Positions 49,554-55,714 of a stretch of DNA of 64,000 nucleotides are shown piece by piece. Source of the stretch: Auanema rhodensis (Eukaryota > Animalia > Nematoda); contig OZ059895.1 of the NCBI GenBank assembly GCA_964057225.1, forward strand, positions 7,998,001-8,062,000, given 5' to 3'. A model generated the notes under the pieces. That model was not told the DNA's origin and ran no database searches. It saw nothing but the letters and a program-made list of their open reading frames with translations. The stretch's first letter is position 1. Every line of letters starts with the position of its first letter. The position numbers and the translations under genes are program-made.

Positions 49554-50735
49554 CTAATTTTGAATGATACTCTCTTCAGTGCGCTTCATTAAGTCAAGAC
49601 AAGCAGCTGAATATTCATCGGGATGAGATAATACGTGTTTAACATGTTCTGTATCAGAGAAAACTAAGGATTTGACATCTTTACCTCGATTTTTTTCGTT
49701 TTCTAAAAACCGGGTTATGTATCTGTAATTAAACAGTTTTAAAAAATTGAATAGCTAAAAGTTATTACTTGTGTCTAACCATATGATCTGCTTCCGAAAA
49801 AATATATAGTTGAGGACCAGGCAAATTAACGTATGTTTGTAGATAGTAAAATTGAGATAAATGTGCACGAATAGGTGGATACACATAGCAGAGAGGGTGA
49901 GCCTCAATTAAATGCTTTCAATTTGAAATTAAATTAAAAAATACCACAAAATTTCGAAGTTTATACATTGTTTTAATATATTTTCGTCGTATTTCTTGAT
50001 CGATCCAATCTAAGCCTTCCAGTGGAGGAGTAGATTGTACTACGGCGTGGGAACAAGGTCCAGCTTGTGTTATTCCCGGAGCACTAAATTTATTTCTTCG
50101 ATAAAAAAAAATTACTGTAAAAACCTGTCAAAAACTACACCCTTGATTCTACTACGTAATTCTTCACGTTGTTCGGCCTCAGTCCATTTCCACAACGATA
50201 TTAAAGCTCGTACCCCATTCATGGAAAATATATGAGCAACGATCGGACTAAACATTGAAAAATTCAAAAAATGACTTTAAAATTTCAAGTTTATACCATC
50301 TATCAAAGCTTCGAAAATCTCCCGGTTTGGCATCAATTGCTCGAAAAAGTGGTGACATGTAAAAGCCGTACCGAGAATTTGGGATGCGATAATGATAACA
50401 AGGAGATGAAAAAGATACTGTCCGATATCTAAAATAAACTTAATTTGCCTCATACTCATTATATATTTACCCCTGATCGTTGTAAATTTTCGCATATCTC
50501 TCCATGTATGAGTACCGAGCTCCAGCCCATCCTAGGAGGAGTACAACGGGCTTATTTTTATCAACTTCAGCTGGTGTACCTGAAGAAGTTTTACATTGCA
50601 ATATATAGTCTCAATTGGAAAACCGTCAGCATTCGTTGGATTTCCTACCAACAGACGTGGTTCAAAAACATGACGACTGAAGAAATTTCTTTGTTGAACC
50701 AACCAAAGATTTGAGAGAATCACCCTTTTCGACAT
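49554..50735 (-). CDS. TMEM53/DUF829 alpha/beta-hydrolase-like protein
   Basis: PVVLLLGWAGARYSYMERYAKIY, AHIFSMNG, KGVVFDSAPG, QLYIFSEADHMV, FSDTEHVKHVLSHPDEY. Confidence 0.88.
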
Positions 50736-50910: not shown

Positions 50911-53900
50911 TTAATCTAAAATAATAATATCATCATCAAAATCTTCTTGTGACGTATGCGCAGCATCGACACTATTAGAGGATATGGTTTGGACTTGAGT
51001 GTTTGAGTTAAATTCTACAGAAGCATGATTATGAACAACAGCTATAGATTGTTTATATGAAGATGTTGATGAAGCAATTATTTCATTTGCTCTTGGTTCT
51101 CGTTTCATAGAGTGCACATTAAGAACACACTTTTGGGGAGGTGAAGCAGGTTTTCTATTATTATTATCTATATTGCTTCCAGACCTTGAATTAATTAAAG
51201 GTTGAGATGAGCTTTCCATTGATAGCGCTAAATTTTTACATACTTTAGAAGGAACCGGTGAAACAGGAATTGTGTTGGAAAGAATTTGATTATTAGGTTG
51301 AGCTTGAGCTTTGCAGGAAGAAAAATCTATTTTATTCGACTCTTCGCCTCTGGCGCATCCGGGTTCATTTAGAGTTTCGATATTTTCTTTTCTACACTTT
51401 AGCGTTGAACTTTGTAAAGAACTCGACTTTCGCATTATATGACAATCTGAACCGGACTTGGCCATTATATCTGTTACAATCATGCTGGTTTGATCAGGTG
51501 AACTAGAGATGGACGAACACTTCGAAGAGACTGCTGGATCATTTAATTTTTGTTTTTTTTCTGAATATTAATGATAAAGATGCTAAAGCATATTGACCTA
51601 ACTTTCTGGTTCATCGTCAGACTCACTATCTAAATCGATTAATGCTACATCATGAGTGAAATCATGTTTAGATAGCCATTCCTCAATATGTCGAAACCTC
51701 TGAAAGAAATTGTGAAAACGGTTCTTAATAACTTGCTTACAGAGTCTTCTTCTGTTCCTTCAGATCGAGAGAAATTTGAACAATTAGAATAAAGTACTTC
51801 AGGTTCATAATCATCATCATCGTTGTCATTAGCATCTTCATTATCATTATTATCATTACCGGCTTTAATACTTTCAACAGGAACTTTTGTGGGCTCAACT
51901 ACAGGTGGAGGTTCAGAAACCTAAGTAAAACTGATTATTTAATAGCTAGAAAATATTGTAGTACCTCCATAGGTTGTACTGGTACAGAATTTTCTTGAAT
52001 ATTGGAACTTAAATTAGAAGTAGTTGAATGCACCTAAATATATTATTTTCATGAATTTCTACAAATTAGCAGTTACTAATGGTTGATTCAAATCTTTTAA
52101 TGCTTCTTCTTGAAGTTTAATTCTTTGTGCATCGTCGAGGATCTCTGTTTTAACAGAATCTGCCTGTCCACTTTCAACGGAAGACAACTGGGCATTGGAA
52201 TTGGCTATCTTGGAACTAACACAGGACTCATTTTTCGAAGCACAAGGGCCCGAAACATTTAGTACAATGATATCAGAGCTACTATCAGATTGTTGCTCCG
52301 CATCATTGGTTGGCACACATGATTCTTGTTCGAGAGCTGGTGTTATATCTCTTTGAGCTCCAGAAGACGTACATGCCAGAGAAGCAATATTTTTAACAGA
52401 AGTTGCAACTTTCTCAGAATTACTTTCTTTGCTAACTTTCGTTAGTGATTGTAAAATATCCAAAGCCGCTTGATTTACAAGAATTCTTGACAACTCTGAA
52501 AGAATATACTAAAATTTAATTTTGCGAACATATATTACCTTTCAAACCGGATTTATCGGAACTTGAGTAGGATGCATTCATTTCACTTCTAGGTGTTCCA
52601 ATATCGCCGCTTAACTCAAGTTCATCTTCGTCCATGCTATTATTTGCTTCCATAACAGGGATATCTTCTTTTGCTAAAGCTTTTTCAGAAGCGTTTCCGC
52701 CGTCCGCAGCGCTTATTTCGTCAACTAATGTATCAGAAATCATGGGCTCATGGATATTCTCCATTATATTAAGAGCTGGCTCAGAAGAAGCAGGAATGTG
52801 TTTAGATTTTGAAGGCGAAGGTTGGGAGACTGGTAAAACATGTTCAACAACAGCAGATTTAATCCCAGAAGTTGTAGGTACAGCTTGTGAAGCATTACTT
52901 GTAGACAATATCGGTGCAAGGGCAGTTTCAGAAGGCTCAGGCATACATTGACAAGCTTTAGGTGTAGACTTAGATGTATTCGGTGAAATATCAATAGTTT
53001 TGTCTATAGGCTCAGATTCTTTCATTACAGTTTTAGAAATTTTCGATGCACGTTCAGAAGCTTCCGCTGCAGAGTCAGAAGGCTCAGGTATCAATTCCGT
53101 ATCTTTGATATTACTCAAATTTGTTCTGAGGTTCTCATTAGCAGATGAGTTTGCAGAAGCATTATCATATTCTTCTTCATCCTCAACGACAGATTCAAGT
53201 TCATCTTCTTCGTCACATTCGTTAGAATCAATAGATATGGAATCATCTTCCAATGGAGAAGAGAAATCAACACGTTCGCTAACAGACTGAAACAGAAAAA
53301 TATTAATAGAATTCATTTTAAAACTACTTGAACGAATTTTTCTATGGAGCAGCTTTTCGGTATTGTCGTTAGGTTGTTAAGACTAGGAGGTTTGGGTAAT
53401 TCATCAACTTAAATAACAAAATAAAATTTTTAAAAAAATGATTCTACAAGCAATTAACCTCCTTCAGGCATATAATCCATATATTGATTCAAATTAGCTT
53501 CATAAGTCACATCTCGAATTGTTTTACTGACAACTGCTGATATATGAGTAATGAAACTCGCTAAGAAAGAAAAAGAATTTAATTAAAGTGTTTGTAACAT
53601 ACGAAAAACATAATCATCTCCTGGTGCAGGGATTCGAGTTGATTTCATAGTTATCAATTCTTTATCCCTTAATTCGATGCAAACACGTCTTATTTCCTCA
53701 GGTGTTACAATGCTAAAATAATATTTGTAACTATTTAAATTAATTAGTAACCAACGGCATTCCAGGTCCTCGCTTGCTCGCAATCAGTTGTGTGAGCTTT
53801 TCATCTAAATTTTTATTTCCTGTCTGAGTTATTGGTATTTTTTGTACAAGAGCATTTTTCAAACTGAAAATGTCGAACTATATTACAAGAATAAAATTTA

Positions 53901-54375
53901 ATTCAAACATACACTTTCCTAGCTTCATCTGACACATCCTCGACAGCATCCAGTTTTAACAGCTTCCGCTCTATTTTCAAAATCACTTTTTGAACCTAAA
54001 AAAAGTAATTTTCAAGAATAAAATATTACTGAGGGTTTACCTCGCGTTCTTCGTATAAAAGGTTTTCTTCTTCTTCATCATCATCAAAATTAATTTCCCG
54101 TTCACCTAGCACTTTAGCTCGAGCTCTTAGCTCCTGAACAAATATCATTTTTTTTATATATAAATCATTGTTTTACATTTCTCATTTTAATAAGTTTCAA
54201 AATTTTATTACTATTCGATTTTGTTTGTCTGCATTCCTGTGATGTACGAACAGTAGAAGTGCTTGGTTGATCTGAAAGAGGAAAAATTACACTATATTGG
54301 CTTGTTTTTAAAAATACCATTTTGAGATGTACGTCTACTTGAAGAAGGTAATTCATTAATTTGTGCATTTGCCAT
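50911..54375 (-). CDS. DAXX-like protein: N-terminal histone-binding-domain-like region, long acidic/Ser-rich disordered region, C-terminal SIM
   Basis: The gene model is phase-consistent. KILKLIKMRNELRARAKVLGEREINFDDDEEENLLYEEREVQKVILKIERKLLKL...VQKIPITQTGNKNLDEKLTQLIASKRGP resembles the DAXX HBD, and the protein ends EDFDDDIIILD*. The CDS is confident; the DAXX assignment is by eye. Confidence 0.7.
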
Positions 54376-54846: not shown

Positions 54847-55389
54847 ATGCTATTGAATAAACGAGTATATAATTGGACGAAAACATTAAGTGGGCGGGGT
54901 TCATTGGTAAGGGTCAATATACCTAGTATTTTCTTCGGCATTGATACATTTTCAACTAAGCGACCCAAAATGGTATGTTATCTGTCCGACCGACTTGTAT
55001 ATTTATAGTTTTCAGAGCCTCACTGCTGAAGAGAGAAAGTCCGAACTTGAGCCTCTCTTGAATCAAGGATGGCAGATGGTGAACGGTCGTGATGCTATTC
55101 AAAAGGTTTTCCTTTTTAAAGATTTTAATGAGGTAGGATAATATTAAAGGATACTTGATAAAAATTTATACTTTAGGCTTTCGGATTCATGTCCCGTATT
55201 GCGTTGAAAGCTGACAAAATGGACCATCACCCAGAATGGTTTAATGTCTATAACAAGGTTTGTAATATCTATATTATTTGAAGTAGATTTTTTGTTCAGG
55301 TTGATATCACTTTGAGCACACATGATGTTAGCGGGTTATCTCAACGAGATATTAAGCTTGCCACATTCATTGAGGAAATCAAGAAATAA
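54847..55389 (+). CDS. pcbd-1: Pterin-4-alpha-carbinolamine dehydratase (PCBD/DCoH), with a possible N-terminal targeting extension and a second in-frame ATG at 54970
   Basis: [90 protein letters not shown]. Confidence 0.95.
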
Positions 55390-55714
55390 TTTTTTGCGGA
55401 TTGAGTTACTACATGCTAAATAAATAACTATTAATGAAACTTTATTCTGCTATTTTCTTTGGTTTTCTTTGGTCAAGGACTTTCCAATGATGGCCTTGCT
55501 ACAATGATATTTTTGTGTATGGTATCACCATCATTATACAAAACGATTGCTAATCAAATTTACGCATCATACGTTTTTATAACTTAAGTTCTGCTATAAT
55601 ACATTAAAGTTTTTATTGCAGAATCATTTTCTGAAAAACAAATTTGATCACGCCAGAATTGGTTGAACACTGAATACTTAAATTCAATAAAATACAAAAT
55701 GTCCTTTGTGTCGC

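What the first reader, a model, noticed from the sequence alone, without database searches (positions are those of the whole stretch)
50911..54375. Probable nematode DAXX-type H3.3 chaperone lacking the N-terminal ATRX-binding bundle
Seen in sequence: from about residue 40 the protein reads KILKLIKMRNELRARAKVLGEREINFDDDEEENLLYEEREVQKVILKIERKLLKL...LVQKIPITQTGNKNLDEKLTQLIASKRGP. By eye this parallels the human DAXX histone-binding domain as I recall it (IQRLEQLL...IRRLQEKELDLSELDD...YLQEARLKRKLIRL...IEQRIPYRGTRYPEVNRRIERLINKPGP). An acidic stretch, a long Ser/Pro-rich disordered region and SIM-like motifs follow (DIIVLN, ALIDLDSESDDE, and terminal DDDIIILD*, compare DAXX EEIIVLSDSD). Established knowledge: DAXX has an N-terminal helical bundle that binds ATRX, and C. 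elegans is usually described as having ATRX (xnp-1) but no obvious DAXX. Inference: this is a divergent DAXX with no room for the helical bundle, implying ATRX-independent, SUMO-guided H3.3-H4 handling.
Basis: partly seen in the sequence, partly recalled or inferred. Interest (0 to 1): 0.78.

Follow-up and report, generated by a model that had tools for sequence, protein, structure and literature searches.

The report
Possible divergent DAXX-like nematode gene
A real 14-exon nematode gene encodes a 963-residue protein laid out like the histone H3.3 chaperone DAXX but without its ATRX-binding bundle; the rules here allowed only exon-by-exon searches, and none of them showed DAXX ancestry.

Summary
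On the minus strand, 54375-50911, fourteen exons join through thirteen GT..AG introns of 41-51 nt into one open frame of 963 codons.

The layout matches published DAXX:
- a hydrophobic and charged block at residues ~41-243;
- a short acidic tract straight after it;
- a long Ser/Pro/Thr-rich tail;
- a SUMO-interaction-like motif as the last residues.

The four-helix bundle is absent. A stop sits just before the ATG, and a divergent PCBD gene starts about 470 bp away.

DAXX homology is untested where it counts. A spliced model may only be searched exon by exon, so I left the joined search and fold out. Exon-wise Pfam, PDB and six-frame own-genome scans found no DAXX. Equally short exons of two neighbouring genes did hit their families, so this is at best a very divergent relative.

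The resemblance to the human histone-binding domain rests on recalled sequence. My hand scoring finds it suggestive, not significant.

Verdict:
- DAXX-like H3.3-H4 chaperone lacking the bundle, about 50%;
- unrelated SUMO-binding disordered nuclear protein, about 40%.

No RNA or cross-species data could be obtained.

The parts
54318..54375 (-). Exon 1 with start codon ATG at 54375. An in-frame TAG lies directly 5' of it, and the sequence TATAG|ATG looks like a trans-splice acceptor.
   Evidence: canonical SL1 is present in the genome
54177..54271 (-). Exon 2: Ser/Thr-rich N-terminal tail, then the start of the helical block (residue ~41 = window 54209).
54041..54133 (-). Exon 3 (residues 52-82): charged helix and acidic loop, E-I-N-F then D/E run. 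Claimed counterpart of the loop between the two DAXX 'tower' helices.
   Evidence: no Pfam or PDB hit
53913..53995 (-). Exon 4 (residues 83-110): second amphipathic helix.
   Evidence: no hit
53756..53863 (-). Exon 5 (residues 110-146): the Q-K-I-P ... L-I ...
   Evidence: no hit in Pfam, PDB or Atlas
53603..53712 (-). Exon 6 (residues 146-183).
   Evidence: only a chance PDB hit to arabinose isomerase, E 0.83
53459..53560 (-). Exon 7 (residues 183-217), ending in D-Y-M-P-E-G.
   Evidence: only a chance PDB hit, E 1.4
53328..53407 (-). Exon 8 (residues 217-243): end of the hydrophobic and charged block.
52539..53286 (-). Exon 9 (residues 244-493): acidic tract followed by a disordered Ser/Pro/Thr-rich region.
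   Evidence: phmmer against 1.84 billion representatives gave 0 hits
53164..53250 (-). Acidic tract E256-D284, 17 D/E in 29 residues, about a dozen residues after the folded-looking block.
52077..52495 (-). Exon 10 (residues 493-632).
52257..52274 (-). SIM-like core DIIVLN (residues 567-572), preceded by a Ser/Asp run.
51965..52033 (-). Exon 11.
51741..51920 (-). Exon 12, with a second Asn/Asp-rich acidic run (residues ~681-700).
51603..51699 (-). Exon 13.
51610..51648 (-). SIM-like motif V733-E745: hydrophobic core L-I-D-L with a D/S/E flank. A K-K-K-Q-K basic cluster follows across the exon 13/14 junction.
50911..51560 (-). Exon 14 and the TAA stop (50911-50913).
50914..50937 (-). C-terminal SIM-like motif: an acidic run, then I-I-I-L-D as the last residues of the protein.

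Best explanation
The gene encodes a very divergent DAXX-type histone H3.3-H4 chaperone that has kept the histone-binding region, a shortened acidic tract, the disordered tail and the C-terminal SUMO-interaction motif. It has no four-helix bundle and no N-terminal SIM.

Proposed working, all inferred:
- residues ~41-243 fold only on an H3.3-H4 dimer and wrap it, as the human domain does;
- the acidic tract adds electrostatic affinity;
- the two or three SIM-like motifs bring the loaded chaperone to SUMO-modified chromatin proteins;
- without the bundle there is no canonical docking site for ATRX/XNP-1.

Shown here: the gene model, the composition zones and the motifs. Not shown: homology, fold, histone binding, SUMO binding and expression.
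For: - Clean 14-exon, 963-aa model.
- The order of the parts matches the DAXX architecture in PMC6735914: folded histone-binding region, acidic domain immediately C-terminal, disordered tail, SIM at the very C-terminus with acidic flanks.
- PMC3985662 describes the loop between the DAXX tower helices: Glu209-Leu210 pairs with H3.3, and a short 3(10) helix follows. In my recalled human sequence this stretch is acid-rich. The model has E64-I65 followed by an acidic run at the corresponding place.
- From my recalled human sequence, whose numbering puts R251, F317, R328 and D331 on the right residue types, three colinear blocks line up with similar spacing. I scored them by hand with BLOSUM62. Human ~205-242 against model 60-97 gives raw 39, ungapped. 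Human ~255-275 against model 117-137 gives raw 28. D-Y-x-P..G-V-D at human 343-349 aligns with model 211-218. This is memory plus hand scoring, not a tool result.
- No room for a bundle: only ~40 Ser/Thr-rich residues precede the block. A TAG stop abuts the ATG. The PCBD neighbour starts ~470 bp upstream on the other strand. A six-frame scan with PF03344 finds nothing on this contig.
Against: - None of the seven exons of the block hits PF20920 (DAXX_hist_bd) or anything else in Pfam at E up to 10.
- A six-frame scan of the whole 181-Mb genome with PF20920 finds no candidate.
- phmmer of exons 3-7 against all PDB chains returns no DAXX chain.
- Exons of 30-44 aa from the two neighbouring genes do hit their families at E 7e-5 to 4e-7. 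Short exons alone therefore do not explain the silence, and the domain must be far from the Pfam model.
- Much of the best block is Glu/Lys/Leu-rich helix, where by-eye likeness is cheap. My hand-scored third block totals only about raw 10 over 30 ungapped residues.
- The acidic tract is 29 residues, against about 50 in human. There is no N-terminal SIM.
Confidence: 0.5

Rival explanations
1. A lineage-specific, mostly disordered nuclear protein with a charged helical N-terminal region and SUMO-interaction motifs, a SUMO-dependent scaffold or adaptor of some other kind. It is not descended from DAXX. The likeness comes from composition plus convergent use of acidic tracts and SIMs.
For: - No DAXX signal in any tool-based test, although control exons of the same size are recognised.
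- Exon 9 has no detectable relative among 1.84 billion representative proteins, which fits a fast-evolving, lineage-restricted protein.
- Charged helices, acidic runs and SIMs are common in nuclear disordered proteins.
- One preprint states that C. elegans has no Daxx homolog (10.1101/294827).
Against: - Folded block, then acidic tract, then disordered tail, then a SIM as the very last residues is the specific DAXX order.
- The non-coiled-coil motifs (Q-K-I-P...L-I...G-P, and D-Y-x-P..G-V-D) fall in the right order and spacing relative to the recalled human sequence.
- No alternative family was found either.
Confidence: 0.4
2. A full DAXX whose helical bundle is encoded by exons further upstream that were missed. 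The acceptor just before ATG 54375 would then be an internal splice site rather than a trans-splice site.
For: The sequence TATAG|ATG is an acceptor in phase 0, so an upstream exon could join in frame. No RNA data could be obtained.
Against: - Only ~470 bp separate the ATG from the start of the divergently transcribed PCBD gene.
- The minus-strand ORFs there and for 3 kb beyond are short, and the region beyond PCBD is AT-rich.
- PF03344 finds nothing on this contig. Its only hit in the genome is a 47-codon stretch with a stop on another contig, E 0.28.
- The genome carries about 3,450 copies of canonical SL1, so an acceptor abutting the ATG is the usual trans-spliced 5' end.
Confidence: 0.05
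3. The model is an artefact or a decaying pseudogene, and no such protein is made.
For: No expression evidence was obtainable. There is no relative in the libraries, which withhold this genome's own records.
Against: - A 2892-nt frame kept open across 13 canonical short introns does not arise by chance.
- The locus is single copy.
- It sits compactly between two recognisable genes.
Confidence: 0.05

Closest known systems
Human DAXX (death domain-associated protein 6), H3.3-H4 chaperone
   Same: The order of the parts is the same: helical histone-binding-type block, acidic tract straight after it, long Ser/Pro/Thr-rich disordered tail, and a SIM with acidic flanks as the last residues (PMC6735914; model). 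By recalled sequence there are three colinear motif blocks.
   Different: - No four-helix bundle (human residues 55-144), so no known ATRX, p53, MDM2 or RASSF1C docking surface.
- No N-terminal SIM.
- Acidic tract of 29 residues rather than ~50.
- Two extra internal SIM-like motifs.
- 963 aa against 740 aa.
- No Pfam PF20920 or PF03344 match exon by exon.
Drosophila Daxx-like protein (DLP)
   Same: An invertebrate DAXX relative with a long disordered body. From my own knowledge, it shows that DAXX family members can diverge strongly in length and sequence outside vertebrates.
   Different: DLP is recognised by sequence methods as a DAXX family member (own knowledge). This protein is not, at exon level.
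C. elegans 'dap-1', called the DAXX homolog in PMC9216614
   Same: It is the only paper I found in the held library that names a nematode gene as a DAXX counterpart. Its RNAi, like that of hira-1 and chaf-1, rescued brood size of an H2B triple knockout.
   Different: The paper gives no sequence evidence. Another preprint says C. elegans has no Daxx homolog. I could not fetch dap-1 to compare, so its relation to this gene is unknown.

Membership tests
DAXX | Histone-binding domain recognisable by profile (Pfam PF20920 DAXX_hist_bd) or by fold (PDB 4H9N-type helices enveloping H3.3-H4) | tested here: inconclusive
   Exon by exon there was no PF20920 hit at E up to 10. There was no candidate in a six-frame scan of the genome and no DAXX chain in PDB phmmer of exons 3-7. 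Control exons of neighbouring genes were detected.
DAXX | N-terminal four-helix bundle (Pfam PF03344, human residues 55-144) that binds ATRX | tested here: not met
   Only ~40 Ser/Thr-rich residues precede the helical block. A stop codon abuts the ATG. PF03344 finds nothing on this contig, and the single genome hit is E 0.28 with an internal stop on contig C7. Caveat: there is no cDNA evidence.
DAXX | Acidic domain immediately C-terminal to the histone-binding domain | tested here: met
   E256-D284 holds 17 D/E in 29 residues and begins about 12 residues after the block. It is shorter than the ~50 residues of human DAXX.
DAXX | SIM at the extreme C-terminus: hydrophobic core with acidic or phosphorylatable flanks | tested here: met
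   The last eight residues are an Asp run followed by I-I-I-L-D. This is a motif match only; SUMO binding was not tested.
DAXX | SIM at the N-terminus (SIM1) | tested here: not met
   Residues 1-40 contain no run of hydrophobic residues.
DAXX | Specific binding of an H3.3-H4 dimer, with selectivity through H3.3 Gly90/Ala87 contacts | not testable with these tools
   It needs a co-fold of the joined domain with histones, or a pull-down. Complex prediction accepts only unaltered references, which here means single exons.
DAXX | Orthologues traceable through intermediate taxa to recognised DAXX proteins | tested here: inconclusive
The word search cannot reach full-length kin from exon-sized queries because of its length window. 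This genome's own records are withheld.

The most novel reading that the evidence does not exclude
Nematodes that use the canonical SL1 leader, the large group that includes C. elegans, have kept a DAXX-derived H3.3-H4 chaperone that escaped notice because its histone-binding domain has drifted below ordinary search thresholds. It has shed the ATRX-binding bundle, in step with the truncated, ADD-less XNP-1 of these worms, and is aimed at chromatin by SUMO alone. That would supply the 'missing' second H3.3 deposition pathway in nematodes.
Probability: 0.35. Interest if true: 0.7.

Novelty: new variant of a known kind. Interest (0 to 1): 0.45.

Why it matters
One preprint I read states that C. 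elegans has HIRA but no Daxx homolog and asks which other H3.3 chaperone it might have (10.1101/294827). A recent nematode genome paper stresses that the ATRX-centred toolkit eroded after the early-branching clades (10.64898/2025.12.19.695367).

A DAXX-type histone-binding domain surviving without its ATRX-docking bundle would have three consequences:
- it would give a concrete candidate for HIRA-independent H3.3 deposition in nematodes;
- it would be a natural separation-of-function form of DAXX, chaperone plus SUMO targeting without ATRX;
- it would parallel the recent unmasking of 'missing' Scm3/HJURP chaperones by remote homology (PMC13322267, abstract seen).

If the likeness is only compositional, the gene is one more fast-evolving disordered nuclear protein and of little general interest.

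Tried and rejected
**Sequence and family searches**
- Pfam on ten exon translations gave nothing, apart from a chance PDGF hit at E 0.29 on exon 10.
- phmmer of exon 9 against 1.84 billion representatives gave 0 hits.
- PDB phmmer of exons 3, 4, 5, 6 and 7 gave no DAXX. The only hits were arabinose isomerase at E 0.83 and a giant-virus protein at E 1.4, both chance.
- Own-genome six-frame scans: PF20920 found none. PF03344 found one 18.5-bit hit at E 0.28 on contig C7, in AT-rich DNA with an internal TGA, which I judge to be noise.
- The ESM Atlas look-alike search for exon 5 returned only short helical GreA-like fragments, which is uninformative.

- The look-up of encoding contigs for the exon-9 ORF found nothing on record. 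The tool says records of the window's own genome, or of one very near it, may be left out.
- The sandbox holds no profile libraries.

- Every search, fold or complex prediction of the joined (spliced) N-terminal domain, because it has no reference.
- Complex prediction with single exons and histones, because an acidic 30-residue helix sticking to histones would not discriminate.

**Checked and dropped**
- The idea that this is an early-branching nematode with the vertebrate-like ATRX/DNMT toolkit. No ADD_ATRX or DNMT1-RFD hit was found, though those scans are exon-wise too.
Full report
**What is there**

The finding's interval lies on the minus strand. I read 54800-53200 and 52620-50800, placed the splice sites and joined them in a script. 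This gives 14 exons and 13 GT..AG introns of 41-51 nt. Most acceptors are TTTCAG-like. The result is a single open frame of 2892 nt, 963 aa plus stop, from ATG 54375 to TAA 50911-50913.

At each junction I examined for alternatives (exons 5/6 and 13/14), only one donor-acceptor pairing keeps the frame open. This includes the less usual donors GTTGGT (exon 5) and GTTAGG (exon 13). The locus is single copy in its 181-Mb assembly. The joined protein was kept only in the sandbox.

**Organism**

The canonical nematode spliced leader SL1 occurs about 3,450 times in the genome, in tandem arrays, and never in the reversed control. Together with the intron style, this confirms a nematode that uses the canonical SL1.

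Scans for ADD_ATRX and DNMT1-RFD were blank. These mark the vertebrate-like toolkit reported for Xiphinema. The scans are exon-wise, so this is weak evidence.

**Checking the observation**

Composition in 40-residue windows gives three zones:
- Residues 1-40 are Ser/Thr/Gln-rich.
- Residues 41-240 hold 30-38% hydrophobic and 8-25% basic residues, the look of a helical, foldable region.
- Residues ~285-963 are rich in Ser/Pro/Thr/Asn/Gln, apart from two further acidic stretches at about 441-480 and 681-760, with the look of disorder.

An acidic tract, E256-D284, follows the block almost at once and holds 17 D/E in 29 residues. A second Asn/Asp-rich run sits at ~681-700.

Hydrophobic SIM-type cores with acidic flanks occur at 733-745 and as the last residues of the protein. 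A third, DIIVLN at 567-572, follows a Ser/Asp run. A K-K-K-Q-K cluster spans the exon 13/14 junction.

**The 5' end**

A TAG stop lies in frame directly before the ATG, and the sequence there, TATAG|ATG, is an acceptor. On the other strand a pterin-4a-carbinolamine dehydratase (PCBD) gene runs away from this gene. Two of its exons hit PF01329 at E 7e-5 and 4e-7, and its likely ATG is at about 54847. That leaves about 470 bp between the two start codons.

Minus-strand ORFs there and for 3 kb beyond are short, and the DNA beyond PCBD is 23-29% G+C. A six-frame scan with the DAXX bundle model PF03344 found nothing on this contig. So 'no room for the helical bundle' is supported by layout, but not by RNA.

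**Testing the DAXX reading**

I therefore left out the joined searches, the joined fold and any complex prediction.

Exon by exon:
- Pfam found nothing for the seven exons of the block at E up to 10.
- The whole genome in six frames has no candidate for PF20920, DAXX_hist_bd, a model of only 84 positions.
- phmmer of exons 3-7 against all PDB chains returned no DAXX chain, only chance hits at E 0.8-1.4.
- The Atlas look-alike search on exon 5 was noise.

As a control, exons of 30-44 aa from the two neighbouring genes are recognised by their Pfam families at E 1e-4 to 1e-7. Short exons are therefore not hopeless. The protein is at best far from the DAXX models.

My own estimate for the best exon, exon 5 against my recalled human sequence, is BLOSUM62 raw ~27-28, about 15 bits. 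That score cannot be significant against any database. The blanks are therefore expected under both hypotheses.

**Relatives**

Records of the window's own genome, or of one very near it, may be left out of these collections. The word search cannot reach full-length kin from exon-sized queries. So I have no cross-species evidence, and in hindsight an exon of the helical block would have been the better query.

**What speaks for DAXX**

Published architecture (PMC6735914):
- SIM1;
- four-helix bundle, residues 55-144;
- histone-binding domain, residues 180-397;
- about 50 acidic residues immediately after it;
- a disordered C-terminal part;
- SIM2 in the last 20 residues.

The model reproduces the last four of these in order. 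A SIM as the literal C-terminus is an unusual and rather specific trait.

PMC3985662 describes the loop between the two 'tower' helices. Glu209-Leu210 pairs with H3.3, and a short 3(10) helix follows. In my recalled human sequence this stretch is acid-rich. The model has Glu64-Ile65 followed by an Asp/Glu run between two amphipathic helices.

From memory of the human sequence, three blocks align colinearly. My recalled numbering places Arg251, Phe317, Arg328 and Asp331 on the right residue types.
- Human ~205-242 with model 60-97 scores raw 39, ungapped.
- Human ~255-275 with model 117-137 scores raw 28.
- The D-Y-x-P..G-V-D motif at human 343-349 aligns with model 211-218.

The spacings between blocks differ by only 5-7 residues. 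Chained with gap costs, I estimate about 60-65 raw, roughly 29 bits. That is suggestive for one pre-chosen pair, but about chance level for a proteome-wide search. It is also inflated by the Glu/Lys/Leu-rich composition. This paragraph is recollection and hand arithmetic, not a tool result.

**Weighing**

Combining a weak sequence signal with a specific architecture, against the low prior for any one gene, I arrive at about even odds. The figures are 0.5 for a divergent DAXX-type chaperone without the bundle and 0.4 for an unrelated SUMO-binding disordered nuclear protein. I give 0.05 each to hidden upstream exons and to a non-functional model.

**Mechanism if DAXX-like (inferred)**

Residues 41-243 would co-fold around an H3.3-H4 dimer, helped by the acidic tract. 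The SIM-like motifs would direct it to SUMO-modified chromatin factors, as SIM2 does for human DAXX at heterochromatin. With no bundle there is no canonical ATRX contact. That would fit the truncated, ADD-less XNP-1 described for C. elegans.

**Literature**

- One preprint states that C. elegans has no Daxx homolog and wonders about other H3.3 chaperones (10.1101/294827).
- One paper calls 'dap-1' the DAXX homolog without giving evidence (PMC9216614).
- I found no paper describing a DAXX-like protein in nematodes.

**Earlier notes of this scan**

One note is the same finding (s1-421363). Another, on the same window (s1-421327), calls the genome a nematode, which bears out.

**Verdict**

The decisive computations are simple and are listed under next steps.

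Noticed in passing
window 50470-50735, minus strand: A DUF829 (TMEM53-like) gene starts at ATG 50735, directly after a TTCAG acceptor and only about 173 nt downstream of the stop of the DAXX-like gene on the same strand. Its exon hits PF05705 at E 1.4e-6. The spacing looks like a nematode operon.
   Followed up: partly
window ~54847-55390, plus strand: A pterin-4a-carbinolamine dehydratase (PCBD/DCoH) gene is transcribed divergently from the DAXX-like gene, with about 470 bp between the two start codons. Two of its exons hit PF01329.
   Followed up: partly
G000:C3:6741531-6766485 and C3:14134320 onward (L003, L004): Canonical SL1 spliced-leader sequence occurs about 3,450 times in the genome, in long tandem arrays with periods of about 252 bp and about 341 bp. 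That is an unusually high copy number.
   Followed up: no
L001:1501-1641, minus strand (G000:C7:8723075-8723215): This is the only genome hit to the DAXX helical-bundle model PF03344: 18.5 bits, E 0.28, model positions 41-87, with an internal TGA, in AT-rich DNA with no neighbouring ORFs. It is probably chance, but it is the one place to look if a separate bundle-encoding remnant exists.
   Followed up: partly
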